Shown: one piece after another, positions 3,410-56,448 of the stretch
How positions within the stretch are numbered: the stretch's first letter is position 1
Layout: every line of letters starts with the position of its first letter
Virus record (IMG/VR): IMGVR_UViG_3300047157_000197
Span: 62,001 to 126,000 of that record
Length of the DNA stretch: 64,000 nt
Reading direction: 5' to 3' (one strand)
Notes under the pieces: model-generated
What the model saw: only the letters and a program-made list of their open reading frames with translations
Databases searched by the model: none
What the model was told of the DNA's origin: nothing
Translations under genes and position numbers: made by a program

Positions 3410-3425
3410 ATTTTTCGTATATTTA
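3394..3425 (+). promoter_or_regulatory. Bacteroidota-type sigma70 (early) promoter upstream of primase
   Basis: TTTG (3394-97), 20-nt spacer, TATATTTA (3418-25), close to Bacteroidota -33 TTTG / -7 TAnnTTTG; near-identical copy at 18825-18856. Confidence 0.6.
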
Positions 3426-3445
3426 CAATGTTTTATAGGTAAATT

Positions 3446-18824: not shown

Positions 18825-18856
18825 TTAGGATATATGAAATAATTTTCGTATATTTA
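18825..18856 (+). promoter_or_regulatory. Bacteroidota-type sigma70 promoter, second copy
   Basis: TTAGGATAT...ATTTTCGTATATTTACA matches 3394-3426, same 20-nt spacer. Confidence 0.6.
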
Positions 18857-18876
18857 CACAAGTAAAGTTATAAAAA

Positions 18877-20067
18877 ATGGCTATATTAAAAAATAAAGAT
18901 AAAGATGATATCAAAAGTGGTATTGTCAATTATTTGTTACATTGTAATGAAACCGTAGATACTAATATTTTAGTAAATAAAATAAATAGTTATTTACCTT
19001 TCGAAGAACGATTAAAAGACCCTAGTATGTTTGAAACTAGTTTAAATATTTTAGTTACTACTGGTGCAGGTAATACAATTCAAGGTGGGGCTGATATATG
19101 GACAAATCATTTTTTAAAATTAATCTGGCCAGAATTGCCAAAAAGAAAAAACTGGAAATTATTAATAGATTCTAAACGACCAACGAACTTTGATACAAAA
19201 TCTTTACCAGAGGGATTAGACTTCCATTTTCATGGAGATGACCCAAGCAAAACAGAAAAGTGGTTATCGGAGTGTATGGGGATTTATTATCTACACTCTC
19301 ATTATCATAAAAGAGAATATATATGGAAATGGGAACGTAAATTTAAAACTATTTTTGTTCATGCATACCCAACAGAAATGGAAGAAGTTATAAATAAAGT
19401 ACCTGAATTAAAAAGATTACAATTTAATACAAAGGTTGATAGTGCATTTTACAATGAGTTTGTACAAAGTTTTAATAAAAGAATTTGGATAGGTAATAAT
19501 CCAAGTAAACTATTAGATGATTTTCCAAACTACACATATACTATACCAAATTTTTATAAATTTAAACATAATATAAGACCAAACGATGAAATTAATAATA
19601 AAATTGGATTTGCATCAAGAGCAGAATCAAGAAAATGTTTGCATTGGGTTCATGGTCATTCAGGCTTTGTTTTAACAGGTAAATATGATTTTGAAAACTT
19701 AAAAGAGAGTACCGGCTACTCATTCCCAGGTGTTAAATTTTATCAATGGAATCCCTCTATTCATGATAAGTTTATGAGAAAAGATTTTGATATATTTCAT
19801 GGAGCTTATTTTAAAGAACCATTTGGTTATTCTATATTTCAAGCAGTTGATTATGGAAAAATTCCAATTATTCATACTGATTGGGCAAAAGAAATAGATT
19901 ACAAATATAGAGCAAGTTCTAAAAATGAATTTGATAAGATGGTTAAAAAAATAATTGGTGATGATAAAAATACACGATTTCAAGAATTTTTTAAGCTAAA
20001 AACTTATATGATGACTTTTGATAATGTAGAAAATTGGTCTACAAAAATATTAGAAAAATTTATTTAA
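18877..20067 (+). CDS. GT-B (GT4-like) glycosyltransferase
   Basis: N-terminal TTGAG...GGA loop; C-terminal EPFGYSIFQAVDYGKIPI motif. Confidence 0.65.
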   Translation: MAILKNKDKDDIKSGIVNYLLHCNETVDTNILVNKINSYLPFEERLKDPSMFETSLNILVTTGAGNTIQGGADIWTNHFLKLIWPELPKRKNWKLLIDSKRPTNFDTKSLPEGLDFHFHGDDPSKTEKWLSECMGIYYLHSHYHKREYIWKWERKFKTIFVHAYPTEMEEVINKVPELKRLQFNTKVDSAFYNEFVQSFNKRIWIGNNPSKLLDDFPNYTYTIPNFYKFKHNIRPNDEINNKIGFASRAESRKCLHWVHGHSGFVLTGKYDFENLKESTGYSFPGVKFYQWNPSIHDKFMRKDFDIFHGAYFKEPFGYSIFQAVDYGKIPIIHTDWAKEIDYKYRASSKNEFDKMVKKIIGDDKNTRFQEFFKLKTYMMTFDNVENWSTKILEKFI

Positions 20068-20068
20068 T

Positions 20069-20077
20069 ATATTTATA
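20069..20077 (+). promoter_or_regulatory. ATATTTATA putative promoter
   Basis: Intergenic copy. Confidence 0.55.
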
Positions 20078-20094
20078 TATACACAAAAGATACT

Positions 20095-20871
20095 ATGTCT
20101 ATTATTAACTATGTCTTAGTTAAAGAGTTTTTTACAAATAACTTCAAAATAAAAAAAGACACAAACGAAAAAGAGTTCAAAGAATTATCACCTGTTAAAT
20201 ACAGATGGACACATGGTGCAACTGATTTGCATCTTGGAGATGGTTTATTGATATATTCTGCTATCCAATACATGAGAGCAAAAATTTGTGTATGTTTAGG
20301 AAGTGGTGGTGGATTTATTCCAAGAATAATGTCACAAGCAAGAATGGATTTACATGACCAAAAAATATTTGACGGAGAAAAGTTAATGGAATGGGGTAAT
20401 GTAGGAACAACTATTTTAGTAGATGCATCAAATGGAGTTGGGGGATATACTGATTGGATAGAAAAAGATTCATTTTATAGAACACATTTTCCAAGTAGAG
20501 TAATATTAGATACAACAGAAAATGCATATTACAACTTTTTTGTTAAAGAAGATATAAAAATAGATTATCTTCATATAGATGCAGGACATTCATATGATGA
20601 TGTAAAGAAAGATTTTGAATTATACAGTAAAATACTAAACCCTAATGGTATTATATCTATTCATGATACTGATGAATCATTTGAAAAAGAACATATCATT
20701 ACAGATGATATATTAGATGATTTTCATCAAGAATATGCAAATGGACCAGCAAGGTTTGTTAAAGAGTTAAAAGAAAACAAAGAATGGGAAGTTTTTAATT
20801 TTTTTAATAATGGTATATTAAGAGATAAACCTTCTTCTACTGGTTTAACATTTATAAGAAGAAATGCATAA
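20095..20871 (+). CDS. Class I SAM-dependent methyltransferase (Methyltransf_24-like)
   Basis: VCLGSGGGF and IDYLHIDAGHSYDDVKKDF...GIISIHD. Confidence 0.85.
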   Translation: MSIINYVLVKEFFTNNFKIKKDTNEKEFKELSPVKYRWTHGATDLHLGDGLLIYSAIQYMRAKICVCLGSGGGFIPRIMSQARMDLHDQKIFDGEKLMEWGNVGTTILVDASNGVGGYTDWIEKDSFYRTHFPSRVILDTTENAYYNFFVKEDIKIDYLHIDAGHSYDDVKKDFELYSKILNPNGIISIHDTDESFEKEHIITDDILDDFHQEYANGPARFVKELKENKEWEVFNFFNNGILRDKPSSTGLTFIRRNA

Positions 20872-21712
20872 AATAAATTTAGTTACAGTTGTTGGACACA
20901 ACACTACACTTCTACCACATATGATAAATCACTACAAAGATATTGTAGATGAGATTTATGTAGTAGTTTACAGACAACATACCTTAGATGGTATTTTAGA
21001 AGATGTAATTAATCTTGGTATCAAACCTTATAAGATAGTAACTGAAGAAAAATTTAATTGGGAAAGAGTAACTCAATTATATAATGAAGTCAAACAAACC
21101 AAACCAAACGAATGGTGGGTGGTTTCAGATGATGATGAATTTCATATATATCCAAAACCTTTACAAGAAATGATAAATGATTGTGAGGATAATGGGTGGG
21201 AATTTATCACAGGAGGATTCCTCGATAGGATAGGAGAGGAAGGAGAGTTTCCTTTGGTAACAAAAGAAACAAATATTTGGAAATCGTTTCCACTTGCAGG
21301 ATTTTTTAGATATCCGATGAGTGGGGCGATGCCAAACAAATGTTGTGTAATGAAAGGTTCGGTGGATGTAACACCTGGTCAACATTTCGCAGTAATTGGT
21401 GATACTGATACTTGGAGAGAACGAGGGTGGAATCACCCTAAAAGATACCCAATGGGTAGAGGTGAGGGATTTATACAAGTTCATCATTTCAAATGGGATT
21501 CAACCGTTCTTGAAAGATTAAAAGAAGTATCAGAAACAAAAAAAGATTATTCTTATTGGAAAGAATATAAAAAAATGTATAAAGCTATAGAAATAAATGA
21601 TTGGAAAATTGACATTAATAATCCTGAATTTATGTTTGAAAAAATGATTGATAATAATCATTGGGATTATATAAAATGGAATAGATTATTTAAGAAAATA
21701 ATTTCCGTTTAA
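20864..21712 (+). CDS. GT-A glycosyltransferase (GT2/GT92-like)
   Basis: LLPHMINHY, WWVVSDDDEFH (DxD), IQVHHFKW. Confidence 0.7.
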   Translation: MHKINLVTVVGHNTTLLPHMINHYKDIVDEIYVVVYRQHTLDGILEDVINLGIKPYKIVTEEKFNWERVTQLYNEVKQTKPNEWWVVSDDDEFHIYPKPLQEMINDCEDNGWEFITGGFLDRIGEEGEFPLVTKETNIWKSFPLAGFFRYPMSGAMPNKCCVMKGSVDVTPGQHFAVIGDTDTWRERGWNHPKRYPMGRGEGFIQVHHFKWDSTVLERLKEVSETKKDYSYWKEYKKMYKAIEINDWKIDINNPEFMFEKMIDNNHWDYIKWNRLFKKIISV

Positions 21713-21723
21713 TCAATTTCTAT

Positions 21724-21732
21724 ATATTTATA
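21724..21732 (+). promoter_or_regulatory. ATATTTATA putative promoter
   Basis: Intergenic copy. Confidence 0.55.
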
Positions 21733-21766
21733 TATATTAACATTAATAATTAAAAATACAAACGTT

Positions 21767-21949
21767 ATGCCTGCAAAAAAAGATGAAACTGCACAACTTC
21801 TTGAAGAAAGAAAAGTTAAAGCTCTTGAAAAAATAGGGAATTCAATAGATGCACTTACTTTATGGTTTGAAGAAATTGATAAAGAGGAATGGGGACCAAG
21901 AATGGAATGGTACCTATCAGAGTGGTACGAAAACAAAATCAAAAAATAG
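21767..21949 (+). CDS. Small hypothetical protein
   Basis: 60-aa helical ORF after promoter motif. Confidence 0.6.
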   Translation: MPAKKDETAQLLEERKVKALEKIGNSIDALTLWFEEIDKEEWGPRMEWYLSEWYENKIKK

Positions 21950-21952
21950 TAT

Positions 21953-23374
21953 ATGCCTAAACTCGGTATCATTGTTCCATATAGAAACCGAAGAACTCAT
22001 TTAAATCATTTTACTACTGCAATTAAAAACTATTTCAATAATTCAAATATTGATTATGAATTAGTAATAGTTGAACAAGCAGATAAAAAATCATTTAATC
22101 GTGGTGCATTATTAAACATTGGTGTAAAAAAAGCACAAGAATTAGAATGTACTTATGTTGCTTTACATGATGTTGATATGTTACCCGAAGATGTTGATTA
22201 TTCTGATGTAAGAGTTCCAACACACTTAGCAACAAATTTCATTTCAGAAAACAAAGAAATGAAACGAATTGTATTTGATGAGTATTTTGGTGGAGTAACC
22301 CTATTTCCAATAAATGATTACTTTCATGTAAATGGGTATTCTAATAAATATTGGGGATGGGGGTACGAGGATGATGATTTACTTTGGAGATGTAAAGAAA
22401 ATTTTATTGATTTTAACACAAAACAATTACCATCAAAAGCACATAGTAGTACAGCACTAAAATTCAATGGTCATACGAGTCAAGTAACAATTCCAAAACC
22501 ATTTAAATTAAAAAACTATACATTATTTTGCTCATTTAATCCAGCAGAGATTGAGTGTAATGAAGGATATATGTTTGATGAATACAATATTCTTGCTATA
22601 CCAGGTATGGATACTGGATTTACGTTTAATTCATATAAAAGATACAAATTTGAAACTTGGACAGCAGATAAAAGATGTATAAGTTTAAAATCAAATATTT
22701 CATCTCCAAAGCAAACTATATTATGTGCATCAATAAATCAAGATGAAGGTAAAGTAAAATTTTACCAAGATGGTGAACTTGTTGATGAGGCTGAATATGA
22801 GGGAAGAATATTACATTATAATAATGAAAAAAAAATATATTTAGGAAATTCACCATCTCTTGAACATAATAAAAGGAGACCGTTTAAAGGAACAATTGAC
22901 TATTTTGCATTATTTAATCATTCACTAGAACCCACACAGATAAAAGAAATATCTACTAACACAGGTCTTGGATTGACAGAATCATTTGGAGCTTATGTTG
23001 CACCACATACTTTAGAAATGTGTTATGATATGAGAAATTCTAGTCTTTCAACAATCATAGATACCTCACATAGAAAAAAGATAGCAGAAGTGAAAGATTG
23101 TGATAGGGTTTTTGTAAATCAAGTAGCTGATTTTGTTGAAATACCAATACCATATCGTAGAGAAAGTACTTTTAAACTTTTATATCATAAAGAAAATGGA
23201 TTTTATGAAAATAAATGGACATGGACCGAAACAAGAAAAAATCAGCTTTATTTTTATAACAAAGTTTTAAAAGGAAAATCTGATTACAAAAGAGATGGAG
23301 TTGATAATGTAAGATTTGAATTATTATCAGATACAAAAATGGATAATTATTATTTTATATCAGTTGAATTATGA
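21953..23374 (+). CDS. GT7 galactosyltransferase-like enzyme with inserted LamG/ConA domain
   Basis: IIVPYRNR, FNRGALLN, HDVD, YFGGV, YWGWGYEDDDL; LamG insert (FYQDG, IYLG, GTIDYFALFNHSL); GT7 C-tail (YHKENG...YKRDG). Confidence 0.85.
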   Translation: MPKLGIIVPYRNRRTHLNHFTTAIKNYFNNSNIDYELVIVEQADKKSFNRGALLNIGVKKAQELECTYVALHDVDMLPEDVDYSDVRVPTHLATNFISENKEMKRIVFDEYFGGVTLFPINDYFHVNGYSNKYWGWGYEDDDLLWRCKENFIDFNTKQLPSKAHSSTALKFNGHTSQVTIPKPFKLKNYTLFCSFNPAEIECNEGYMFDEYNILAIPGMDTGFTFNSYKRYKFETWTADKRCISLKSNISSPKQTILCASINQDEGKVKFYQDGELVDEAEYEGRILHYNNEKKIYLGNSPSLEHNKRRPFKGTIDYFALFNHSLEPTQIKEISTNTGLGLTESFGAYVAPHTLEMCYDMRNSSLSTIIDTSHRKKIAEVKDCDRVFVNQVADFVEIPIPYRRESTFKLLYHKENGFYENKWTWTETRKNQLYFYNKVLKGKSDYKRDGVDNVRFELLSDTKMDNYYFISVEL

Positions 23375-23784
23375 TAGCAGAAAAATATGATGTAGGTATA
23401 ATTGCTGGAAACTTTGATGTAATACATCCAGGTTATATAAAAATGTTTAAAGAATGTAAATCATATTGTAAACAATTTATAGTTTTATTACATACAGACC
23501 CATCAATAGAAAGACCACATAAACTAAAACCAATTCTCACTAAAGAAGAACGAACTGAAATTTTAACTTCAATAAAGTATATAGATGGAATTGCATATTA
23601 TACTTATGAAAAAGAATTGGTAGATTTGATAGAAAGGTTATCACCCGATATCAGATTTTTAGGAGATGATTATCGTGGTAAAACATATACAGGGTTTGAA
23701 TTAGATGTACCAGTTCATTATTTAAACAGAGACCATGGTTGGAGTACAACTAAATTTAAAAAGTTAATAGCAGATACAATATGA
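23371..23784 (+). CDS. Cytidylyltransferase (TagD/HldE-like HIGH family)
   Basis: GNFDVIHPGY, GDDY, WSTT motifs. Confidence 0.85.
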   Translation: MIAEKYDVGIIAGNFDVIHPGYIKMFKECKSYCKQFIVLLHTDPSIERPHKLKPILTKEERTEILTSIKYIDGIAYYTYEKELVDLIERLSPDIRFLGDDYRGKTYTGFELDVPVHYLNRDHGWSTTKFKKLIADTI

Positions 23785-25250
23785 AGTTAGGAGTTTGTGT
23801 TCCGTATAGAAATAGAGAAGCTCACTTAAAAGAGTTTATACCAAAAGTTGGAAAATATTTAGATGCACAAGGCATTGATTACTGTATTTATTTTGCACAC
23901 CAAGTTGATGATAAATTATTCAACAGAGGGGCAACAAAAAATGTTGCAGCAAAACACGCATTTGAAGATGGATGTGATTATATAGTTTGGCATGATATAG
24001 ATATGATACCAGAAGAAGGGTGTGATTATTCATTTCCTAAAAAAACACCAATACATATTGCAACTTCAATATCACAAATGGATTACAAATTAAAGTATGA
24101 AGAATACTTTGGTGGTGCGGTTTTATTTTCAAAAGAACAGGTAGAAAAAACCAATGGATATTCAAATGATTATTGGGATTGGGGAATGGAAGATGATGAT
24201 TTATTTTGGAGATGTGTATTAGAAGGATATGCAGATGATACCTATATGGATTATCCAACTGATGACCAAACCTATTTAAATTTTAATGGTTTAAATTCTT
24301 TTATTAAAATAGATAAAGATGCTAAATTAAGAAACGTAACATCTCGTTCTCACACAGTTTCAATATTAGTTCGAGCATATCAACAAGAAGATAAAGTTAA
24401 TATTTGGTTGGTAGGTGATGATGAACGAAGATTTTGTGAATATCCAATAATTCGTAGACCAGGATATGATTGGGGATTGAGTTATAATAATTCAAGAGCA
24501 TATACTGCACAACTTTGGGATAATGAAAAAAATCATTTATATCAATGGATAAAAAGATATGAAGGCCAATGGACTTGGATAACTTTAAAAGTAGATTCTG
24601 CAACTCAAAAAATACATTTTTATTTAAATGGAAAAGAATCAGATGCAAGACATGGTCATGGTACACAATCTCCATTGTCATATGAGAATAGATTAAAATC
24701 TTATGGAATGGGTGATTGGTATATTGGAACTACTACATCTGCAAGAAAGAATGATATCAATCGTTGGTTAAAGGGAGATATTGGAAAAGTTTATGTATGG
24801 AATCGTAATTTAAGTGATGAGGAAATAAAAGATATTCATAAAAATGTACCTGAAAATAAATTGGTACTTCATTATGATTTTAATTCAGAACAACAAAAAA
24901 ACTCACCCTATACTGCAGTTGATTTAACTGGCAATGGATTACATGGTAGTATAAGAAATGCAGAATTAAAAAAAGGAAAAATTAAAATTCCTTATACAAT
25001 AATCCCACATAGAATACCTGGAAAACTAAAATGTTTACCTCACAAAGATGAGGGGTTGGTAAAAAACAAAGATGGAAAAGAAGTTTGGGCAAAAGGAGAA
25101 ACAACTGCAAGAAACGAAAGACGATATGTTCTTCAAATGCAACAAGGTACTTGGGATTATAAATCTGATGGTATTAAACAATTAAAATATGAATTAGTTG
25201 GAATTGAGGAAATAACTCCAAAAGCAAAACTAATAAATGTTAAATTCTAA
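23781..25250 (+). CDS. GT7 galactosyltransferase-like enzyme with inserted LamG domain (paralog)
   Basis: VPYRNRE, FNRG, WHDID, YFGG, YWDWGMEDDDL; LamG insert. Confidence 0.85.
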   Translation: MKLGVCVPYRNREAHLKEFIPKVGKYLDAQGIDYCIYFAHQVDDKLFNRGATKNVAAKHAFEDGCDYIVWHDIDMIPEEGCDYSFPKKTPIHIATSISQMDYKLKYEEYFGGAVLFSKEQVEKTNGYSNDYWDWGMEDDDLFWRCVLEGYADDTYMDYPTDDQTYLNFNGLNSFIKIDKDAKLRNVTSRSHTVSILVRAYQQEDKVNIWLVGDDERRFCEYPIIRRPGYDWGLSYNNSRAYTAQLWDNEKNHLYQWIKRYEGQWTWITLKVDSATQKIHFYLNGKESDARHGHGTQSPLSYENRLKSYGMGDWYIGTTTSARKNDINRWLKGDIGKVYVWNRNLSDEEIKDIHKNVPENKLVLHYDFNSEQQKNSPYTAVDLTGNGLHGSIRNAELKKGKIKIPYTIIPHRIPGKLKCLPHKDEGLVKNKDGKEVWAKGETTARNERRYVLQMQQGTWDYKSDGIKQLKYELVGIEEITPKAKLINVKF

Positions 25251-25275
25251 TATATATTAATATACAAGAAATTCA

Positions 25276-27455: not shown

Positions 27456-27460
27456 CTCAA

Positions 27461-29850: not shown

Positions 29851-30418
29851 TATATTTTATAAACAAAGAGATTGGGATGATTTTCATTTTTATCATGGGT
29901 CAACTTTAAATGAAGTTAAAGTAGTACAACCATCGATATATTATGAACAACGAGGTTCAATATCTACAACATATCATTCGGATTATTATGATAGAATCTT
30001 ACCAGCAAACGATAGAAATAATGGTTTAAAATTTAAACACGATAGATTTTCAAAATCAAAAAAGAATGTGTTGAGAGGATTACATTATGATGATAAAACT
30101 TGGAAACTTGTTAATTGCTTACATGGTAAGATTTATTTAGTTGTATTAGATTTAAGACCTAAACAAGATAACTATGGTAAATGGGAATCATTTATCCTCT
30201 CACCAGAAACAGCAACACAAGTTTTAATTCCACCAATGTTTGCAAACGGTCATTATGTATTTGAAGATGATTCTATCTTTAGTTATAAATTGGCATACCA
30301 AGGGGAATTTAACGATGTAGATAAACAACAAACAATAAAATGGAATAGTACAAAGTTCAACATCGATTGGCCGTGTACAACTCCTATAATATCAAAAAGA
30401 GATGCAAATGGAAATTAA
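29834..30418 (+). CDS. rmlC: dTDP-4-dehydrorhamnose 3,5-epimerase-like cupin
   Basis: EQRG, SKSKKNVLRGLHY, KLV.C..G.IY.V..DLR, IPPMFANG, ISKRD. Confidence 0.85.
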   Translation: MAKGRSIFYKQRDWDDFHFYHGSTLNEVKVVQPSIYYEQRGSISTTYHSDYYDRILPANDRNNGLKFKHDRFSKSKKNVLRGLHYDDKTWKLVNCLHGKIYLVVLDLRPKQDNYGKWESFILSPETATQVLIPPMFANGHYVFEDDSIFSYKLAYQGEFNDVDKQQTIKWNSTKFNIDWPCTTPIISKRDANGN

Positions 30419-31046
30419 AAATTTAGATTATCACAAAGATAGATGGGTAGATGGCAACTGGTCAAAACAAGATTTAATTGATTTTGAGGATGATATTATT
30501 TCTCATTGGGAAAATGGAGAAATCACAGGCCCTATACATTTATCAAATGGTAATGAAGAACAACTTATAAAAATATTTAACAAAATTGGTATTAATGATT
30601 GGGTATTTTCAACTTGGAGGTCTCATTATCATGCACTACTACATGGTGTAGAACCACAAGTGTTAAAACAAAAAATATTAGAAGGAAAATCTATTACAAT
30701 AATTGATAAGGAATCTAATTTCTACTCATCAGCAATTGTAACAGGTATTTTACCTATTGCATTAGGTGTTGCAAAAGGAATAAAAGAAAAAGGTAGTGAT
30801 GAAAAGGTATGGTGTTTTATTGGAGATATGACATTTGAAACTGGTATATTCTATGAAGTACACAAGTACGCTAGAAATTTTAATTTACCACTTTATTTTG
30901 TAGTAGAAGATAATGAAGTTTCTACCAATACACCAACTTCACATACTTGGAATGAAATTCAAAGAGAAATTCCAGAAGATGTAATTTATTACAAATATAA
31001 ATCTAAATATCCTCACTATGGGACAGGAAAATGGGTAGTATTTTAA
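30402..31046 (+). CDS. TPP-dependent E1-alpha-like subunit (short)
   Basis: GPIHLSNGNE, STWRSHYH, GDMTFETG...VEDN TPP motif. Confidence 0.85.
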   Translation: MQMEIKNLDYHKDRWVDGNWSKQDLIDFEDDIISHWENGEITGPIHLSNGNEEQLIKIFNKIGINDWVFSTWRSHYHALLHGVEPQVLKQKILEGKSITIIDKESNFYSSAIVTGILPIALGVAKGIKEKGSDEKVWCFIGDMTFETGIFYEVHKYARNFNLPLYFVVEDNEVSTNTPTSHTWNEIQREIPEDVIYYKYKSKYPHYGTGKWVVF

Positions 31047-32233
31047 ATTTTGTTTTTTTGTTTGATGAAGTCTCTCAACCTAGTTGGTATATGAATGGGC
31101 CATTTTCTGATTATATTTCAATAAACTATAATTACACAGTTGGTATTGAGTTTGATAGTAATCTTAATAACATTATTGTATTAGAAACACACGAACATTT
31201 CAAAGGAACTCATCAAAATTTAGAAACACAAATTTTTGGAACAACAATACTTGAAATATTGAAAAACAATGACGTAAAAATAATATTTGCTTCAATCGCA
31301 GACCCACCTGATGATAGAGAAACTGTTAAATTAAAAAATAAAATTGAAAAAGCAGGATTAACTAATAAAGTTTATTATATAGAAAGTTCTATAAACAATC
31401 GAAATAAAAAGAATACATTTTGTTATCACCATTTCTTAGAAGAACCAGTTGTTCATAAATTAAAGAATGGAGAATGGAACTTTTTTAATAATTATACCAA
31501 TGAATTGGGATATAAAAGTACAGATATTCAAGAAACTGAAATAAATGAATATAGAGAAAAGAAATTTTTATCCTTTAATAGAACAATAGATAAGTTTAAT
31601 AGATGGAGTTTATTACACACTTACTTAGAAAATGATTTTTCGGATTCATATTTTAGTTTTTTAAACTTTTCAAATGATTACTCATCAAAAATAACTCATG
31701 AAAATGCACCAATATATTGTAAAACTCCTAGATTAGCATTTGAAGAATATACTAGTAGAATACCAATAGAACTTGATACACAAAATATAAAATCAAATAC
31801 TGATTTATCAAGATTTAAAACAAGTGATACTTTTAAAAAGAATTTGTTTTTAAACTCATGTATCAATATTGTAACTGAAACAACATTTAGAGAAAATGAA
31901 GTGTTCCTATCAGAAAAAATTATAAAGCCTCTTATAGGATATCAACCATTTATTGTTCTAGGCCCATATCAATATCTTAAAGAATTAAAAAATTTAGGAT
32001 ATAAAACTTTTTCTGAATTTTGGGATGAAAGTTATGATGAAATAGAAAACGCAGAAGAACGATATTTTGCAGTAGAAAAAATAATATTAGAATTAAATAA
32101 AAAAAATATTGATGAAATAAACGAAATTTATCAAAAAATTAAAAATATATGTATATATAATAGAAAGGTATTTGATAATTACGATATAGATTCGATTCCA
32201 AATATAATAAAACAAATAGAAAATGAAAAATAA
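31031..32233 (+). CDS. Putative glycosyltransferase-like protein (paralog 3)
   Basis: FLSFNR...IVTETTF...FLSEKIIKPLIGYQPF...GYKTFSEFWDESYD. Confidence 0.5.
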   Translation: MGSILNFVFLFDEVSQPSWYMNGPFSDYISINYNYTVGIEFDSNLNNIIVLETHEHFKGTHQNLETQIFGTTILEILKNNDVKIIFASIADPPDDRETVKLKNKIEKAGLTNKVYYIESSINNRNKKNTFCYHHFLEEPVVHKLKNGEWNFFNNYTNELGYKSTDIQETEINEYREKKFLSFNRTIDKFNRWSLLHTYLENDFSDSYFSFLNFSNDYSSKITHENAPIYCKTPRLAFEEYTSRIPIELDTQNIKSNTDLSRFKTSDTFKKNLFLNSCINIVTETTFRENEVFLSEKIIKPLIGYQPFIVLGPYQYLKELKNLGYKTFSEFWDESYDEIENAEERYFAVEKIILELNKKNIDEINEIYQKIKNICIYNRKVFDNYDIDSIPNIIKQIENEK

Positions 32234-33188
32234 AAAGGTTTTGATAACAGGTGCCAACGGATTGGTTGGTAATTACATGGTTCAAAAATGTATCGATAGA
32301 GGTGCATTTGTAACGGCGGTTGATATAAGACAACCAGACAATCAACTAGAAAAATATAAAGATGAAAATTACCAATTCATTAATGCAGATTTAAGAGAGT
32401 TCTCCTCGTGTAAAAGAGTTGTAGAGGGTCAAGATATCATATTTCATATTGCAGGTGTTAAGGGTTCTCCTAAGAGGGCAATGGAACAACCTGCTGATTA
32501 CTTTGTACCTATGTTACAATTTAATACCAATATGATGGAAGCAGCAAGATTAGAAGATGTAGAATGGTATGTGTACACTTCAACTGTTGGAGTATATCAA
32601 CCAGCTGAGGTATTTTATGAAGATGATGTATGGAAAACATTCCCATCAGAAAAAGATAAGTATGCTGGATGGGCAAAGAGATTAGGTGAATTACAAGCTG
32701 AAGTTTATTCTGTATCATTTGATTGGAATAAGGCATCGGTTGTAAGACCAGCAAACATTTATGGTAGACATGATAACTTCGGACCAGAATCAACAGTAAT
32801 TGCATCACTTATTAAAAGATTATTTGGTGAAAAGGAACATCCACTAATTTGTTGGGGAGATGGTTCACCAATCAGAGATTTTATTTATGCTGGTGATGTT
32901 GCTGATGGTATCATAAAATCATACGAACAAAAATTAACACAACCAATCAACTTAGGTAGTGGTACTGGTGTTACCATTAGAGAACTTGCTGAAACTCTTG
33001 TAGATATTTACGAAGAAATGTATGGAGTTAAGGTTGGTATCGAATGGGATAGTACAAAACCAAATGGAGATGCTAAAAGATTGATGAGTACAGAAAGAGC
33101 AGAATCTTTCGGAGTTATTCAACAAGTATCTTTAAGAGAAGGATTAAAAGAAACAATAGATTATTATTTAAACGAATTTACAAAATAA
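32223..33188 (+). CDS. NAD-dependent NDP-sugar epimerase/reductase (GDP-fucose-synthase-like SDR)
   Basis: TGANGLVG, RPANIYG, WGDGSPIRDFIY, NLGSG. Confidence 0.85.
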   Translation: MKNKKVLITGANGLVGNYMVQKCIDRGAFVTAVDIRQPDNQLEKYKDENYQFINADLREFSSCKRVVEGQDIIFHIAGVKGSPKRAMEQPADYFVPMLQFNTNMMEAARLEDVEWYVYTSTVGVYQPAEVFYEDDVWKTFPSEKDKYAGWAKRLGELQAEVYSVSFDWNKASVVRPANIYGRHDNFGPESTVIASLIKRLFGEKEHPLICWGDGSPIRDFIYAGDVADGIIKSYEQKLTQPINLGSGTGVTIRELAETLVDIYEEMYGVKVGIEWDSTKPNGDAKRLMSTERAESFGVIQQVSLREGLKETIDYYLNEFTK

Positions 33189-33194
33189 AAAGTT

Positions 33195-34187
33195 ATGAAA
33201 AAAACAGACAAAATATTAGTTACAGGAGCAAGTGGATTTATAGGTTCACGATTAGTTAAATCACTTTATGAAGGTGGATTTACAGATATAAGAGCAACAT
33301 CTTGGAGTAGAGATTTAAGAAATGATTTCGAAGGATGTGAAAATGTAGAATTTTTAAAAGGAAATTTACAAGATGCAGATTTTTGTGAAATCGTATCAAA
33401 AGATATTGATGTAATTTTTCATTGTGCAGCTAACACTTCAAATGCTTTGGATACAAAATTTAATCCATTACTTCATGTTACACCAAATATTGAAATGAAT
33501 GTAAATCTTATGGAACAAAGTTGGAGAAACAAAGTTCGTAAGTTTATGTTTATATCATCTAATACAACATATCCTGATATGGGAGATGTTCCTTGTACTG
33601 AAGATATAGAAGTTCAAACACCAGATATTGTACCTGTATATAAAGCAGTGGGTAATATGAAAAGATATTGTGAAACACTTTGTGATTTCTTTTCAAATCA
33701 GATTCACGACCCAATGCAGTGTATTATTATCAGACCTTCTAATGCATTTGGACCAAATGATAAATTTGATTTTGAAAAATGTCATGTTACACCAGCAAAC
33801 ATTAGAAAAGTAGCAGATAATTTAAATCCTATTCCTGTATGGGGAGATGGAACTGAAGTAAGAGATGTTATTCATGTTGATGATATGGTAGGTGGGTTTA
33901 TTACAGTTGCAGAAAAAGTTGATACATACGATATTTACAATGTATCCTATGGTTCAGGTTATACTGTAATGGAAGTACTTGATAAAATTAAAGAAATAGA
34001 AGGAAACACAAATCCGGTAGAATTTGTTAATAACAAAGCACCGATGATACCTGTAAGACTTCTTGGTAACGATAAACTTGTTGCACTTGGATGGAAACCT
34101 AAATATGATTTAGATAGTGGATTGAGAGATGCACTTAAGTGGTATAAAGCAAACAAAGACCAGTTTAATCCAAATTCAAGACCATAA
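33195..34187 (+). CDS. NAD-dependent NDP-sugar epimerase/reductase (SDR)
   Basis: TGASGFIG, RPSNAFG, WGDGTEVRDVIHVDD. Confidence 0.85.
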   Translation: MKKTDKILVTGASGFIGSRLVKSLYEGGFTDIRATSWSRDLRNDFEGCENVEFLKGNLQDADFCEIVSKDIDVIFHCAANTSNALDTKFNPLLHVTPNIEMNVNLMEQSWRNKVRKFMFISSNTTYPDMGDVPCTEDIEVQTPDIVPVYKAVGNMKRYCETLCDFFSNQIHDPMQCIIIRPSNAFGPNDKFDFEKCHVTPANIRKVADNLNPIPVWGDGTEVRDVIHVDDMVGGFITVAEKVDTYDIYNVSYGSGYTVMEVLDKIKEIEGNTNPVEFVNNKAPMIPVRLLGNDKLVALGWKPKYDLDSGLRDALKWYKANKDQFNPNSRP

Positions 34188-34738
34188 TGGCAGAACCAAA
34201 ATTTACACCATATTTAGATGCTTTAACAGAAGCAATGAAATTAAGTATGGAAAATGATAACACAATATTCATCGGACAGCAGATAGTTTATTATGGCAAC
34301 CCAATGAGTAAAACCATTGAAGGATTGCCAAAAGAACGAATGATTGAAACTCCTGTAATGGAAGAAGTTCAAATGGGAATGACTTTAGGGTTAGCAATGT
34401 ATGGTCATTCAGTAATTAGTTTTTATCCAAGATGGGATTTTGTTATATGTGCTGCAAATCAATTAGTAAATCATTTAGATAAAATAAATGTAATGTCTGA
34501 TGGTGCATGGAATCCAAATATAATTATTCGAGTTGGTAAGGGAAGTGATACACCACTTGACCCTGGTCATCAACACAAAGCAGATTATACAGAAGAATTT
34601 TCATCTATGTTAAAACATACAAATGTAGTAAAACTTGATACTCATGAAAAAATACTTCCAGCTTATAAAGAAGCATTAACAAATGGTGGTATTTGGGTGA
34701 TGGTTGAATATCCTCAATTATACTATGAAGATAAATAG
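34187..34738 (+). CDS. TPP-dependent E1-beta/transketolase pyrimidine-binding subunit (short)
   Basis: ETPVMEE.QMG..LGLA, CAANQLVNH, PGHQH. Confidence 0.85.
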   Translation: MAEPKFTPYLDALTEAMKLSMENDNTIFIGQQIVYYGNPMSKTIEGLPKERMIETPVMEEVQMGMTLGLAMYGHSVISFYPRWDFVICAANQLVNHLDKINVMSDGAWNPNIIIRVGKGSDTPLDPGHQHKADYTEEFSSMLKHTNVVKLDTHEKILPAYKEALTNGGIWVMVEYPQLYYEDK

Positions 34739-36179
34739 AGTATTTGATATTATTGGACCACGAGGACCAGTGCCAAATGGTTTAAATTGGAATTTTACTG
34801 ATACGTTTTGGGATTACGATTTTTATATCTATCATAAACTTATTGATAAATTTAATGAATCATATACACAAATATCTGTTTATGATTGTAATTTAAATTT
34901 ACCACAAGATATTATAAAAAACTATCATATAAGTGATTTACATTTTGATGAAAATGCAAAAGAAATCACAAACAAAAAAGAAAATTATTTTTTTACCATA
35001 CATCCATTTGGTAACATTCACATTTCTACTGGATTAGATACGAGCTATCACGAAGGTAGACATAGTTTTGATTTTATATCAAAGAAAACAAAATCATATT
35101 CTAAAGCTTCAAATTTTTGGTTTATATATGATTATAGTAGTGAAGGTGATATTAACGAATATATATTTGAATCATTACATCTTGCGTGTGAACGAAACAA
35201 TATAAATCCCTCAAAAATTATTGTAATAACTGCATCTGAAAATACTTTTGATATTTACAAAAAATATTTAGATAAAAATCCACAAGATAATTTATTATAT
35301 ACAGCATTTTATCCATGGTCACTTCTTGGAAAAGCAAAAGATACAAATTCCATTTTGTTTGAAAATAAAATAATAAATTTTCATGGGTTTAAAAATAAAA
35401 ATTCTGTAATGTTAGATGAAGAATTTGATAATCTAACTCAACGAGAATCTCATGCACTTTGTTTAAATAGAAGATTGGCACCTCATAGAATAATATTAAT
35501 AAGTTGGTTACTTGAAACTAAACTTTTTGATAAAACAAAAACTTCTTTTGATATAAATCTGTTACACTCACATGATGCCGGATTAGATTTAATATCAGGC
35601 AGTGGACATGATGAAGAGGGCTATATTAAAACACAGCCTATTAAAAATCTAATAATGGGTGGTTATCGAAAAATGATAAAGAAAGAAAAAAGTATTATAG
35701 ATTTTGAAGATATAGAAAATGTTTGGGGATTTGCATTTGAAAACTCAGAAAACTATAAATCAACCTATTTTTCAATTGTAACAGAAACTCTTTTTTATGA
35801 GTTTGGAAATTATTTATCTGAAAAAACTTGGAAACCAATTGCACACTTACATCCATTTATTTTTGTTGGTAGACCTGGTATGTTGAAGTTTTTACATAGT
35901 TTAGGATTTAAAACTTTTAGTGAGTATTGGGATGAAAGTTATGATACTGTCGAATCAAACTCATTAAGAATGGAAAAGATATTTGAAGTTACTACAACAC
36001 TATTATCTAAAAGTAAAGATGAGTGGGATTTATTAAATAAAAAATTAAAACCTATACTTATTTATAACAGAAATTTACTTTTATCATTTCAAGAAGAAAA
36101 GGTAGGTAATGCTTATAAAAATAAATTATTTAATTTAATTAAACATGAACCTAATCAAGAAAATTATTACTTACTTTAA
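34725..36179 (+). CDS. Putative glycosyltransferase-like protein (paralog 4)
   Basis: LCLNRR...IVTETLF...YLSEKTWKPIAHLHPF...GFKTFSEYWDESYD; likely start 34725 (track 34704). Confidence 0.5.
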   Translation: MKINRVFDIIGPRGPVPNGLNWNFTDTFWDYDFYIYHKLIDKFNESYTQISVYDCNLNLPQDIIKNYHISDLHFDENAKEITNKKENYFFTIHPFGNIHISTGLDTSYHEGRHSFDFISKKTKSYSKASNFWFIYDYSSEGDINEYIFESLHLACERNNINPSKIIVITASENTFDIYKKYLDKNPQDNLLYTAFYPWSLLGKAKDTNSILFENKIINFHGFKNKNSVMLDEEFDNLTQRESHALCLNRRLAPHRIILISWLLETKLFDKTKTSFDINLLHSHDAGLDLISGSGHDEEGYIKTQPIKNLIMGGYRKMIKKEKSIIDFEDIENVWGFAFENSENYKSTYFSIVTETLFYEFGNYLSEKTWKPIAHLHPFIFVGRPGMLKFLHSLGFKTFSEYWDESYDTVESNSLRMEKIFEVTTTLLSKSKDEWDLLNKKLKPILIYNRNLLLSFQEEKVGNAYKNKLFNLIKHEPNQENYYLL

Positions 36180-56413: not shown

Positions 56414-56448
56414 AAATTTAATTAACCCAAAAAAAAGGAAAAATAAAA

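What the first reader, a model, noticed from the sequence alone, without database searches (positions are those of the whole stretch)
18877..36179. 17-kb phage glycan-synthesis island between tail and head genes
GT4-like, GT-A, two GT7, three GT-like paralogs, a methyltransferase, a cytidylyltransferase, a radical SAM enzyme, a lectin, three SDRs, RmlC and a TPP pair. This is far more than T4-type DNA glucosylation needs and resembles an O-antigen/capsule locus or the fibril-glycosylation clusters of giant eukaryotic viruses. I saw no Wzx/Wzy/ABC exporter or transmembrane segments, which favours cytoplasmic acceptors (virion proteins or DNA). Inference: an autonomous virion-glycosylation pathway.
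Basis: partly seen in the sequence, partly recalled or inferred. Interest (0 to 1): 0.7.

Follow-up and report, generated by a model that had tools for sequence, protein, structure and literature searches.

The report
Conserved glycan-building module in marine jumbo phage
A common, uncultured marine jumbo phage carries an 18-gene sugar-tailoring and sugar-transfer cassette between its tail-fibre and head genes; relatives keep the same cassette, and it most likely coats a phage-made molecule, probably virion proteins, with a complex glycan.

Summary
Window 18877-36179 is one co-directional block of 18 ORFs between tail-fibre genes and TerL, portal and MCP.

It holds about seven glycosyltransferases:
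- a GT4-like GT-B;
- a GT-A-like protein;
- two GT7 enzymes fused to ConA-like domains;
- three paralogs of a phage-only GT-B family.

It also holds a methyltransferase, a small cytidylyltransferase-fold enzyme, an N-twitch radical SAM enzyme, a free ConA-like protein, three SDRs, a cupin epimerase and a split ThDP enzyme. None has a transmembrane segment. The closed ~274-kb genome has no Wzx, ABC exporter or initiating transferase.

- "RmlC" and one SDR belong to the Campylobacter NDP-heptose C4-oxidation/epimerisation type.
- The module is not an accessory island. It is syntenic in 78 IMG/VR loci, and GT7 is as conserved as the MCP.
- The pathway is only partly autonomous, because precursor supply is missing.

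A structural-gene (late-type) promoter motif sits inside the block and is conserved in relatives. Complete relatives that keep the cassette have no ThyA-type or C5-MT route to a hydroxylated DNA base.

The acceptor is unproven. My estimates: virion proteins about 0.45, DNA about 0.2. I rate it a new variant of a known kind.

The parts
18843..18857 (+). Early-type (host sigma-A-like, TAnnTTT[AG]) promoter-like motif TTTTCGTATATTTAC, 20 nt upstream of the o01 start codon
   Evidence: About 25 copies in the genome. All but one lie between genes (the last lies in the terminal repeat), 16-74 nt upstream of start codons, mostly before small early-region and nucleotide-metabolism genes.
18877..20067 (+). 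o01: GT4-like GT-B glycosyltransferase
   Evidence: No Pfam, NCBIfam or PHROG hit. The AF2 model is a GT-B fold whose best PDB hits are GT4 enzymes, and also T4 AGT/BGT. It has the motif EPFGYSIF[QED]A..GK[LI]PI. It is conserved directly upstream of o02 and downstream of fibre genes in 4 relatives.
20068..20077 (+). Late-type promoter-like motif TATATTTATA, 27 nt upstream of o02
   Evidence: 31 exact copies in the genome, 27 of them in the 5% non-coding DNA. They sit before terminase-region, portal-region, post-MCP and giant fibre genes.
20095..20871 (+). o02: SAM-dependent methyltransferase (Methyltransf_24)
   Evidence: Pfam 44.9 bits against a cut-off of 26.3. Conserved in relatives.
20864..21712 (+). 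o03: GT-A-like protein (weak GT2_4 match, SDDDE motif)
   Evidence: Pfam 22.8 bits, below the cut-off. Motif seen. Conserved in relatives.
21723..21732 (+). Late-type promoter-like motif upstream of o04/o05
   Evidence: The same motif lies 32-35 nt upstream of the o04 homolog in loci L048, L020 and L038, where o14 is 43-44% identical.
21767..21949 (+). o04: conserved 60-aa ORF of unknown function
   Evidence: A BLASTP homolog lies at the same position in most related loci.
21953..23374 (+). o05: GT7 (beta-4-galactosyltransferase-like GT-A) fused to a ConA-like (Laminin_G_3) domain
   Evidence: Pfam 7N 68 bits, 7C 59 bits, LamG3 45.8 bits. DVD and WGYEDDD motifs.
23371..23784 (+). o06: small cytidylyltransferase-fold nucleotidyltransferase (TagD-like or HldE-domain-II-like); a variable member of the cassette
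   Evidence: Pfam CTP_transf_like. NCBIfam rfaE_dom_II 65 bits and g3p_cytidyltrns 56 bits, both below cut-off. Best PDB hit is TagD, 1coz. Present in only 5 of the related loci.
23781..25250 (+). o07: second GT7 + ConA-like glycosyltransferase, the most conserved gene of the block
   Evidence: Pfam. DID and WGMEDDD motifs. 1679 relatives; the best 120 are all at least 67% identical with the same architecture.
25276..26724 (+). o08: N-terminal twitch-domain radical SAM enzyme
   Evidence: NF033640 349.8 bits against a cut-off of 170. CNFKCSYC motif plus 4 N-terminal Cys. It co-occurs with the GT-B family even in distant loci.
26721..27455 (+). o09: stand-alone ConA-like (Laminin_G_3) protein; variable member
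   Evidence: Pfam 36 bits against a cut-off of 27.6. Synteny.
27425..28888 (+). o10: phage-specific GT-B paralog with an N-terminal extension; variable member
   Evidence: Paralogous to o18 (30% over 333 aa) and to o14.
28885..29850 (+). o11: SDR, a close relative of PDB 6vo6/6vo8 (from memory, C. jejuni Cj1427, the NDP-heptose C4-dehydrogenase)
   Evidence: phmmer E 8e-106, 357 bits; the next hit scores 71 bits.
29834..30418 (+). o12: cupin 3,5-epimerase of the GDP-D-glycero-4-keto-D-lyxo-heptose type (not true RmlC)
   Evidence: PDB 8db5, 8dco and 7m14 score 152-159 bits; true RmlC scores at most 88 bits.
30402..31046 (+). o13: ThDP enzyme, PP-binding (E1 alpha-like) half
   Evidence: Pfam E1_dh 52.7 bits. 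PDB PDH E1 alpha.
31031..32233 (+). o14: phage-specific GT-B glycosyltransferase, shortest paralog
   Evidence: The AF2 model (pLDDT 90) is a GT-B fold with weak hits to the phage HY126 GT, LmbT, SenB, H. pylori FucT and T4 BGT/AGT. 462 IMG/VR stretches encode relatives. No hit in GenBank phages or in 185,579 species genomes.
32223..33188 (+). o15: SDR, GDP-fucose-synthase-like (candidate C4 ketoreductase)
   Evidence: NCBIfam Fcl 124 bits, below cut-off.
33195..34187 (+). o16: SDR, GDP-fucose-synthase-like or epimerase-like (candidate ketoreductase)
   Evidence: NCBIfam Fcl 138 bits. PDB GDP-fucose synthases, 7anh and 7m13.
34187..34738 (+). o17: ThDP enzyme, pyrimidine-binding (E1 beta-like) half
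   Evidence: NCBIfam PDH E1 beta 52.7 bits. Pfam Transket_pyr 23.6 bits, below cut-off.
34704..36179 (+). o18: phage-specific GT-B paralog; the true start is probably at residue 8 (34725)
   Evidence: Paralogy. The Atlas holds the sequence from residue 8 on, and its nearest clusters are all viral and without a Pfam family.

Best explanation
This is a cytoplasmic, phage-encoded glycan assembly line. It is expressed with the virion genes and decorates a phage-made macromolecule, most probably virion proteins such as the Ser/Thr-rich fibres and/or the capsid.

Proposed steps:
1. A host-supplied NDP-heptose or NDP-hexose is oxidised at C4 by the Cj1427-like SDR o11. In some relatives o06 may help to activate the sugar.
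2. The cupin o12 epimerises it at C3/C5.
3. The split ThDP enzyme o13+o17 probably adds a two-carbon branch from pyruvate.
4. The Fcl-like SDRs o15 and o16 reduce it.
5. The radical SAM enzyme o08 and the methyltransferase o02 add further tailoring.
6. Seven soluble transferases then build the glycan: the GT4-like o01, the GT-A-like o03, the two GT7-lectin fusions o05 and o07, and the three phage-specific GT-B paralogs o10, o14 and o18. The ConA-like domains hold the growing glycan or the acceptor.

Shown: gene identities, folds, motifs, synteny, promoter-like motifs, and the absence of exporters.
Inferred: the order of the steps, the identity of the sugar, the branching step, and the acceptor.
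For: Gene content and folds.

Precedent for E1 alpha/beta pairs adding a C2 branch to NDP-4-keto sugars: PMC4802897. Reference for the heptose pathway: PMC10680097.

Soluble enzymes only, and no Wzx, ABC or multi-TM exporter in the closed genome.

Position between fibre genes and TerL, portal and MCP.

Promoter-like motifs:
- The late-type motif TATATTTATA is shared with structural genes. It sits before o02 and o04/o05, and is conserved before o04 in relatives whose o14 is 43-44% identical.

Conservation:
- The cassette is a conserved core in 78 loci.
- o07 is as conserved as the MCP: at least 67% against 64-79%.

Link to fibres:
- Both GT4-like paralogs sit 3-72 nt behind hypervariable, Ser/Thr-rich fibre-like genes in all five genomes.

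Against a DNA acceptor:
- The complete relatives G004 and G005 keep the cassette but have no divergent ThyA-like gene and no C5-MT; G004 has no ThyA-family gene at all, G005 only a canonical-scoring one.
- o14 and o18 are acidic.

Metatranscriptomes:
- The core is present at the level of ordinary structural genes in libraries that clearly hold real RNA.
Against: - No acceptor was identified, and no glycosylation-site motif is known.
- Ser/Thr-rich fibres are ordinary in phages.
- Promoter classes are inferred from motifs only, and o01 itself has the early-type motif.
- The complex prediction of a fibre-like protein with the GT4-like paralog gave no answer.
- Phage DNA-glycan clusters with heptose, a cytidylyltransferase and a GT-B enzyme exist, and can lie beside structural genes (bioRxiv 10.1101/2023.12.21.572611).
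- The best fold hit of o14 is a phage DNA arabinosyltransferase-type GT, 9iqz.
- Metatranscriptome depth over the block is low, so DNA carry-over is not excluded.
- Completeness of G004 and G005 is a CheckV estimate.
Confidence: 0.45

Rival explanations
1. DNA hypermodification. The cassette makes activated unusual sugars and transfers a glycan onto a hydroxylated pyrimidine in phage DNA, protecting it from host nucleases. This would resemble T4 glucosyl-hmC, arabinosyl-5hoC, and the heptosyl-5hmC clusters found in metaviromes.
For: - Phage clusters with a HAD/kinase, a cytidylyltransferase and a GT-B enzyme put mono- and di-heptose on 5hmC, and such clusters occur beside structural genes.
- The genome has a divergent 232-aa ThyA-like gene. 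It keeps the catalytic Cys, has Asp at the N177-equivalent position (cytosine type), and its best hits are MilA CMP hydroxymethylase and the 9iqu/9iqc entries. G001 and G002 have it too.
- Fold hits of o14 and o01 include the HY126 GT and T4 BGT/AGT.
- o01 has an early-type promoter motif and a basic pI.
Against: - G004 (198.5 kb, 100% by CheckV) and G005 (95%) keep the cassette but lack the ThyA-like gene. G004 has no ThyA-family gene at all.
- None of 7 genomes has a C5-cytosine methyltransferase.
- The ThyA-like gene lies more than 100 kb away, in a nucleotide-metabolism block with its own amidotransferase and PLP enzyme.
- About seven GTs plus lectin domains exceed any known DNA glycan, which reach at most a trisaccharide.
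- o14 and o18 are acidic.
- Late-type promoters sit inside the block.
- A second cluster at genome 204.7-216 kb, with a HAD-NTP-transferase fusion, is the better candidate for DNA glycosylation.
Confidence: 0.2
2. Remodelling of the host envelope. The soluble phage transferases act on host undecaprenyl-linked or lipid A-core intermediates and change the O-antigen, capsule or glycoprotein glycans of the infected Bacteroidota cell. The host's own flippase and exporter move the product out. The benefit would be superinfection exclusion or less loss of progeny on cell debris, as proposed for cyanophage LPS gene clusters.
For: - The enzyme types are those of O-antigen and capsule loci; o11 and o12 are closest to Campylobacter capsule enzymes.
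- Many GTs that act on lipid-linked acceptors have no transmembrane segment (established knowledge of GT4 and GT2 enzymes).
- The host would have to supply the precursors anyway.
Against: - There is no initiating transferase, flippase, polymerase or exporter anywhere in the closed genome.
- The block sits in the structural-gene region and carries late-type promoter motifs, which leaves little time for surface change.
- It is strictly conserved as a core module with MCP-like conservation of o07 across phages that probably infect different hosts, whereas surface-glycan genes normally vary with the host.
- The GT-B family was found only in viruses.
Confidence: 0.12
3. Another cytoplasmic product. 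This could be a free or protein-primed polysaccharide, a teichoic-acid-like polymer, a glycosylated small molecule or nucleotide, or glycosylated RNA, used for example as packaging or ejection material, as an osmolyte, or as an anti-defence decoy.
For: - The acceptor is unknown.
- o06 resembles TagD as much as it resembles HldE domain II.
- The block is always followed by a giant NMNAT-like/HD/CCA-adding protein.
- Radical SAM and ThDP chemistry is typical of natural-product sugars.
Against: - There is no precedent in phages.
- No polymerase-type (processive GT2 or TagF) enzyme was recognised.
- The adjacency to the giant protein may only reflect conserved gene order.
Confidence: 0.1

Closest known systems
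Campylobacter jejuni capsular heptose modification pathway (Cj1427 C4-dehydrogenase, Cj1430 C3/C5-epimerase, Cj1428 C4-reductase; PMC10680097)
   Same: o11 matches PDB 6vo6/6vo8 at 357 bits. o12 matches the GDP-D-glycero-4-keto-D-lyxo-heptose 3,5-epimerases at 152-159 bits, far above true RmlC. o15 and o16 are Fcl-like reductases, like Cj1428, MlghC and DdahC. The genes are adjacent, as in the capsule locus.
   Different: The phage does not encode the GDP-heptose supply: no GmhA and no GHMP kinase. A split ThDP enzyme and GT-B genes are interleaved with the pathway genes. There is no Kps export. The nucleotide carrier and the sugar are unknown. The identity of 6vo6 as Cj1427 rests on my memory; the tool gives only 'putative sugar-nucleotide epimerase/dehydratease'.
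Autonomous glycosylation machineries of giant eukaryotic viruses (chlorovirus capsid glycans, mimivirus fibril glycans)
   Same: The virus encodes both the sugar-nucleotide tailoring enzymes and multiple soluble GTs and a methyltransferase. These act in the cytoplasm without host secretory machinery. The module is of comparable size.
   Different: The host is bacterial and the virus is a tailed phage of T4-like structural ancestry. The enzyme families differ: GT7-lectin fusions and a phage-only GT-B clade. The resemblance is recalled from established knowledge and was not tested here. Virion glycans have not been shown.
Mycobacteriophage virion glycosylation (Freeman et al. 2023, cited in PMC12619734)
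   Same: Phage-encoded GTs glycosylate capsid and tail-tube proteins in the cytoplasm. This is the only proven case of phage virion glycosylation.
   Different: Those systems use 1-4 GT genes and host sugar nucleotides. Here there are about 7 GTs plus an 8-10 gene sugar-tailoring pathway, in a Gram-negative (probably Bacteroidota) host. No sequence relationship was found: PHROGs gave no hit for the GTs.
Phage DNA glycan hypermodification clusters (T4 AGT/BGT; arabinosyl-5hoC in RB69, DLP3 and HY126, PMC13326640; MT/5mYOX-GT clusters, bioRxiv 10.1101/2023.12.21.572611)
   Same: These have GT-B transferases, phage-encoded NDP-sugar synthesis, heptose and cytidylyltransferase components, and occasional placement near structural genes. 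There are weak fold hits.
   Different: The enzyme that makes the base hydroxyl handle is not in or near the block, and is missing from complete relatives that keep the block. The block has many more GTs and also lectin domains.
PDH-E1 alpha/beta-like two-carbon branching enzymes of deoxysugar pathways (Plm8/Plm9 of paulomycin, AviB1/AviB2 of avilamycin; PMC4802897)
   Same: A separate PP-domain subunit (o13) and Pyr-domain subunit (o17) sit among enzymes that make and reduce an NDP-4-keto sugar.
   Different: The phage subunits are much shorter (214 and 183 aa). The two genes are separated by four others. Activity has not been tested.
'Moraphages', aquatic jumbo phages with four core putative GT orthogroups (PMC12619734)
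   Same: These are jumbo (200-307 kb) uncultured aquatic phages with predicted Bacteroidota hosts. Their MCP tree includes Rhodothermus phage RM378, which our MCP also hits. GTs are noted as core genes.
   Different: Membership could not be tested because their sequences are not held. Most moraphages are from freshwater, whereas this phage is marine. That paper does not describe the cassette.

Membership tests
Campylobacter-type NDP-heptose C4-oxidation / epimerisation / reduction pathway | Cj1427-like C4-dehydrogenase SDR | tested here: met
   o11 against PDB 6vo6/6vo8: E 8e-106, 357 bits; the next hit scores 71 bits. That this entry is Cj1427 rests on memory.
Campylobacter-type NDP-heptose C4-oxidation / epimerisation / reduction pathway | Cupin C3/C5-epimerase of the 4-keto-heptose type | tested here: met
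   o12 scores 152-159 bits against 8db5, 8dco and 7m14, and at most 88 bits against true RmlC.
Campylobacter-type NDP-heptose C4-oxidation / epimerisation / reduction pathway | Fcl-like C4-reductase | tested here: inconclusive
   o15 and o16 best match GDP-fucose synthase models (124 and 138 bits, below the cut-off of 500). They hit 7anh and 7m13 only weakly.
Campylobacter-type NDP-heptose C4-oxidation / epimerisation / reduction pathway | Supply of NDP-D-glycero-D-manno-heptose (GmhA, kinase, phosphatase, nucleotidyltransferase) | tested here: not met
   The phage genome has no SIS_2 and no GHMP kinase. It has one PfkB kinase far away, and o06 is variable. The host may supply the sugar.
CAZy GT7 (beta-4-galactosyltransferase-like GT-A) | Glyco_transf_7N and 7C domains above the Pfam cut-offs, with the DXD and WGxEDDD catalytic motifs | tested here: met
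   o05: 68 and 59 bits. o07: 62 and 69 bits. Motifs DVD/DID and WGYEDDD/WGMEDDD.
GT4 (retaining GT-B) | GT-B fold nearest to GT4 structures, with an E-x7-E motif | tested here: inconclusive
   The o01 model hits GT4 enzymes at E 1e-8, TM 0.55-0.6. The motif is E-x7-[Q/E/D]. There is no Pfam GT4/GT1 match.
GT10 fucosyltransferases (for o10, o14 and o18) | Pfam Glyco_transf_10 match or a close fold match | tested here: not met
   No Pfam hit. The Atlas GT10 lead scored only 0.79. H. pylori FucT gives TM 0.27-0.41. I file these as an unclassified phage-specific GT-B clade.
Wzx/Wzy- or ABC-dependent O-antigen / capsule locus | Initiating phosphoglycosyl transferase, flippase or ABC exporter, and polymerase | tested here: not met
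   No transmembrane segment in the block. No Polysacc_synt match, and no ABC_tran match above cut-off, in the genome. The few multi-TM ORFs have no exporter domain.
Phage DNA glycosyl-hypermodification cluster | An enzyme that makes the base hydroxyl handle (ThyA homolog, or C5-MT + 5mYOX), linked to the GTs and co-inherited with them | tested here: not met
   A ThyA-like gene is present in G000, G001 and G002 but lies more than 100 kb away. It is absent from G004 and G005, which keep the cassette. No genome has a C5-MT. The Tet_JBP search had no working control.
Phage DNA glycosyl-hypermodification cluster | Glycosylated bases in virion DNA | not testable with these tools
   This needs LC-MS or native-DNA signal data.
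Virion-protein glycosylation system (mycobacteriophage or giant-virus type) | Glycan covalently attached to virion proteins | not testable with these tools
   Only indirect evidence: late-type promoter motifs, position, and GT4-like genes behind fibre genes.
NF033640 N-twitch radical SAM | Score above the curated cut-off, a CxxxCxxC motif, and N-terminal auxiliary Cys residues | tested here: met
   349.8 bits against a cut-off of 170. C154, C158 and C161, plus C39, C58, C100 and C103.
PDH-E1-like two-carbon branching enzyme pair | Separate PP-binding and Pyr-binding ThDP subunits beside NDP-4-keto-sugar enzymes | tested here: inconclusive
   o13 matches E1_dh at 52.7 bits, above cut-off. o17 matches only below cut-offs. 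The context fits. Heterodimer formation and activity were not tested.

The most novel reading that the evidence does not exclude
A widespread lineage of marine jumbo phages builds, entirely in the host cytoplasm and with its own enzymes, a complex heteroglycan on its virion. The glycan probably contains an epimerised, C-branched, methylated heptose-type sugar. It would be a self-encoded 'glycocalyx' on a bacterial virus. The machinery includes a phage-only GT-B family and GT7-lectin fusions that are as conserved as the capsid protein.
Probability: 0.35. Interest if true: 0.85.

Novelty: new variant of a known kind. Interest (0 to 1): 0.7.

Why it matters
If the glycan is on the virion, this would be the most elaborate glycosylation system known in a bacteriophage, comparable with those of giant eukaryotic viruses. 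It would also sit in an abundant marine phage: near-identical sequence occurs in at least 14 seawater DNA runs from at least 13 samples. A glycan coat could affect host recognition, adsorption to particles, resistance to grazing or proteases, and virion stability.

Whatever the acceptor, the block offers:
- a new GT-B family, with 462 IMG/VR stretches and none found in cultured phages or cellular genomes;
- a GT7-lectin architecture outside eukaryotes;
- a compact split ThDP enzyme and an N-twitch radical SAM enzyme, set in a sugar pathway whose product is unknown.

It also shows that 'accessory-looking' sugar gene blocks in phages can be core, late-module functions.

Tried and rejected
- DNA megablast of the whole block against 50,697 GenBank phages gave no match. 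tblastn of o14 and o07 gave no match. o08 hit only Ralstonia phage RsoM2USA, where every neighbour is annotated 'hypothetical'.
- PHROGs gave nothing for the GTs.
- PDB sequence searches for o01 and o18 gave nothing.
- A pattern scan of 185,579 species genomes for the GT-B family found no relative. The method has limited sensitivity.
- I could not confirm from the held papers that 6vo6 is Cj1427.
- Complex prediction of the 572-aa fibre/baseplate-like protein with the GT4-like paralog gave 'no answer'. It is not evidence either way.
- The Tet_JBP search had no working control.
- Rejected: that this is a horizontally acquired island. GC matches the genome and the synteny is lineage-wide.
- Rejected: that o12 is RmlC.
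- Rejected: that o10, o14 and o18 are GT10 enzymes.
- Rejected: that the downstream 1735-aa ORF is a glycosylated structural protein. It has NMNAT-like, HD and CCA-adding domains.
- Ser/Thr-rich tracts in the fibres were found, but I judge them non-diagnostic.

Full report
**Where the window lies.** The window is bases 62001-126000 of a 275,970-bp IMG/VR virus record. GC is about 29% throughout, and the block shows no compositional break. 326 of 333 ORFs lie on the + strand. The first ~2 kb of the record repeats at its end at 96.6-99.3% identity, so the genome is closed at about 274 kb. TerL, portal and MCP are T4-like. The nearest MCPs in GenBank phages are an uncultured 484-kb phage (57%), Microcystis phage Mel-JY01 (53%) and Flavobacterium phage immuto (51%). 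Near-identical sequence occurs in at least 14 seawater or viral-fraction DNA runs from at least 13 samples, and in six seawater metatranscriptomes.

**The observation.** Window 18877-36179 holds 18 co-directional ORFs, mostly with overlapping stops and starts.
- Methyltransf_24 (o02);
- a weak GT2_4 match with an SDDDE motif (o03);
- two GT7N+GT7C+Laminin_G_3 fusions (o05 and o07, 31% identical), which keep the DVD/DID and WGxEDDD motifs of beta-4-galactosyltransferases;
- a small cytidylyltransferase-fold protein (o06);
- an N-twitch radical SAM protein (o08, NF033640, 350 bits against a cut-off of 170), with CNFKCSYC and four N-terminal Cys;
- a free Laminin_G_3 protein (o09);
- three SDRs (o11, o15, o16);
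- a cupin epimerase (o12);
- an E1-alpha-like (o13) and E1-beta-like (o17) ThDP pair.

The three 'GT-like paralogs' are real paralogs. An AF2 model of o14 (pLDDT 90) is a GT-B fold with only weak matches to many GT-B enzymes. o01 has no family hit, but its model (pLDDT 81) is a GT-B fold nearest to GT4 enzymes, and its family keeps an E-x7-E-like motif. No protein has a transmembrane-like segment.

**Corrections to the gene calls.**
- o12 scores 152-159 bits against the GDP-D-glycero-4-keto-D-lyxo-heptose 3,5- and 3-epimerases of C. jejuni, but at most 88 bits against true RmlC.
- o11 scores 357 bits against PDB 6vo6/6vo8, with the next hit at 71 bits. From memory this entry is Cj1427, the C4-dehydrogenase that starts the capsular heptose modification pathway described in PMC10680097. 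I could not confirm the PDB code in the held papers.
- o15 and o16 are GDP-fucose-synthase-like, as is the C4-reductase Cj1428.

The sugar chemistry is therefore of the 'oxidise C4, epimerise C3/C5, reduce C4' type known for heptoses, not a dTDP-rhamnose pathway. The ThDP pair is interleaved with these genes. It parallels the PDH-E1 alpha/beta-like pairs that add a two-carbon branch from pyruvate to C4 of NDP-4-keto sugars in the paulomycin and avilamycin pathways (PMC4802897), so a C-branched sugar is a reasonable inference.

The phage does not encode GmhA or a GHMP kinase. It has one distant PfkB kinase. o06 resembles TagD and HldE domain II equally. Precursor supply therefore depends on the host.

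**Not an island but a core module.**
- o14 has 368 relatives in the protein collection, and 462 stretches in IMG/VR encode relatives. No hit appeared in 50,697 GenBank phages, and a pattern scan of 185,579 species genomes found none. The nearest Atlas clusters are all viral and have no Pfam family.
- In 78 related loci the order o11-o12-o13-o14-o15-o16-o17-o18 is almost invariant, down to about 30% identity.
- o03-o04-o05-o07-o08 is common; o06, o09 and o10 are variable.
- The radical SAM gene travels with the GT-B family even in distant loci.
- The order block, then giant ORF, then p219, p229 and TerL is kept.
- o07 has 1679 relatives. The best 120 are all at least 67% identical with the same three-domain architecture. 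That matches the conservation of the MCP in the same lineage, 64-79%.

**Regulatory signals.** Two promoter-like motifs stand out.
- TTTTCGTATATTT[AG][CT] occurs about 25 times. All but one copy lie between genes (the last lies in the terminal repeat), 16-74 nt before start codons. They sit mostly before small genes in the first 41 kb and before nucleotide-metabolism genes. The motif fits the Bacteroidota sigma-A -7 box TAnnTTTG, so I read it as an early, host-polymerase class. One copy precedes o01.
- TATATTTATA occurs 31 times, 27 of them in the 5% non-coding DNA, 27-50 nt before start codons. It sits before the terminase-region, portal-region and post-MCP genes and before the giant fibre-like genes. 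I read it as the late, structural class.
- Copies of the late motif sit right after the o01 stop codon (before o02) and before o04/o05. A variant sits before o08.
- The copy before o04 is conserved in relatives whose o14 is only 43-44% identical.

In four metatranscriptomes the scaffold-like gene and the MCP reach depths of 100-900, with sharp steps at the gene boundaries. The libraries therefore hold real RNA. The block's core (depth 2-15) is at the level of the neighbouring structural genes (depth 2-11). DNA carry-over at that level cannot be excluded.

**Export.** The closed genome has no Polysacc_synt (Wzx) match and no ABC_tran match above cut-off. The few multi-TM ORFs have no exporter domains.

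**The DNA rival.** Phage clusters that put heptose on 5hmC, using a cytidylyltransferase and a GT-B enzyme, are known and can lie near structural genes (bioRxiv 10.1101/2023.12.21.572611). Arabinosyl-5hoC systems start from ThyA homologs (PMC13326640).

This genome has two ThyA-family genes:
- a canonical ThyA, with the D169 and N177 equivalents kept;
- a divergent 232-aa ThyA-like protein. It keeps the catalytic Cys and has Asp at the N177-equivalent position (cytosine type). Its best hits are MilA CMP hydroxymethylase and 9iqu/9iqc. It sits among RNR, an Asn-synthase-like amidotransferase and a PLP enzyme.

Some base modification is therefore likely in this phage. G001 and G002 share that gene at 78% identity. 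G004 (198.5 kb, CheckV 100%) and G005 (95%) keep the cassette but lack it, and G004 has no ThyA-family gene at all. None of seven genomes has a C5-cytosine methyltransferase, in a search whose control worked. The Tet_JBP search had no working control. The cassette is therefore inherited independently of every known route to a glycosylatable base.

A second glycan cluster lies at genome 204.7-216 kb. It holds two GT4 genes, a GT2, an SDR, a UDP-glucose dehydrogenase, a Glyco_trans_1_2, a HAD-NTP-transferase fusion and a DegT aminotransferase. It resembles the known DNA-sugar clusters more closely.

**Link to fibres.** o01 and its 331-aa paralog (genome 146036-147031) each lie directly behind a hypervariable, Ser/Thr-rich fibre-like gene. 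The gap is 3-12 nt in relatives and 72 nt for o01 here. This arrangement holds in all five genomes compared, although the fibre genes themselves share only short segments. A complex prediction for one such pair gave no answer.

**Conclusion.** The block is a conserved, apparently late-expressed, wholly soluble glycan assembly line. The weight of indirect evidence favours virion proteins as the acceptor (about 0.45). DNA (about 0.2), host envelope intermediates (about 0.12) and other cytoplasmic products (about 0.1) remain open.

Virus-encoded glycosylation is known in giant viruses, mycobacteriophages and DNA hypermodification. This one differs from those in several ways:
- its size;
- its enzyme families;
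- its probable branched heptose-type sugar;
- its status as a core module of an abundant marine jumbo-phage lineage.

I therefore rate it a new variant of a known kind. The moraphage paper notes four core GT orthogroups in aquatic jumbo phages of Bacteroidota but does not describe such a cassette. Whether this phage belongs to that lineage could not be tested.

Noticed in passing
genome 204,692-215,800 (outside the window; locus L012:6692-17799): A second glycan cluster: two GT4-like genes, a GT2, an SDR epimerase/dehydratase, a UDP-glucose dehydrogenase, a Glyco_trans_1_2, a HAD + NTP_transferase fusion (460 aa) and a DegT aminotransferase. A SPASM radical SAM enzyme and a PD-(D/E)XK nuclease lie just upstream. 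Both promoter-like motif classes occur in it.
   Followed up: partly
genome 186,572-187,270 (outside the window; L013:2572-3270): A divergent 232-aa ThyA-family protein. It keeps the catalytic Cys, has Asp at the N177-equivalent (cytosine-type) and Arg at the D169-equivalent position. Its best hits are MilA CMP 5-hydroxymethylase and 9iqu/9iqc. It sits next to an Asn-synthase-like amidotransferase and a PLP enzyme. This suggests a modified cytosine in this phage's DNA, independent of the block.
   Followed up: partly
whole genome; in the window e.g. 3410-3445, 18843-18857 (early type) and 559, 1738, 8875, 20068, 21723, 41536, 44505, 46718, 58162 (late type): Two sharply defined promoter-like motif classes. 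TTTTCGTATATTT[AG][CT] resembles the Bacteroidota sigma-A -7 box, which hints at a Bacteroidota host. TATATTTATA sits before structural genes and is analogous to the T4 late promoter TATAAATA.
   Followed up: partly
window 36306-41513: A 1735-aa ORF with a weak NMN-adenylyltransferase-like N-terminus, an HD domain and a CCA-adding (PolyA_pol head) domain. In relatives it always lies between the glycan block and the terminase region, and there it also carries DUF5661.
   Followed up: partly
window 55256-58056: In four seawater metatranscriptomes the scaffold-like gene and the MCP reach word depths of 100-900 with sharp steps at the gene boundaries. Flanking genes stay at 2-11. The phage is actively infecting in those samples.
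   Followed up: no
window 8929-18804 and 61782 onward; genome 131-146 kb: An unusual number of very large Ser/Thr-rich (22-31% against a median of 11.7%) fibre-like proteins: 2220, 1794, 1720, 1306, 837, 781 and 671 aa. They are hypervariable between relatives. The 837-aa protein has weak BACON-like and intein-splicing-like matches.
   Followed up: partly
genome 146,036-148,363 (outside the window; L011): The paralog of o01 (331 aa) is followed by a conserved 439-aa protein of unknown function. The pair lies behind a fibre-like gene in all five genomes.
   Followed up: partly
genome 1-2,024 and 273,871-275,970: An imperfect (96.6-99.3%) ~2-kb terminal redundancy. The record, classed 'linear' by IMG/VR, is therefore effectively a closed genome.
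   Followed up: yes
window 5539-8697: An SbcC-like nuclease subunit (PHROG 77) lies between structural-looking genes, and the 3446-4390 gene is preceded by an early-type motif. Replication and repair genes are thus interspersed in this part of the window.
   Followed up: no
genome 262,785-263,381 (outside the window): A lone PfkB-family sugar kinase (249-aa ORF). Together with o06 it could mimic a split HldE (heptose kinase plus adenylyltransferase). This was not examined further.
   Followed up: no
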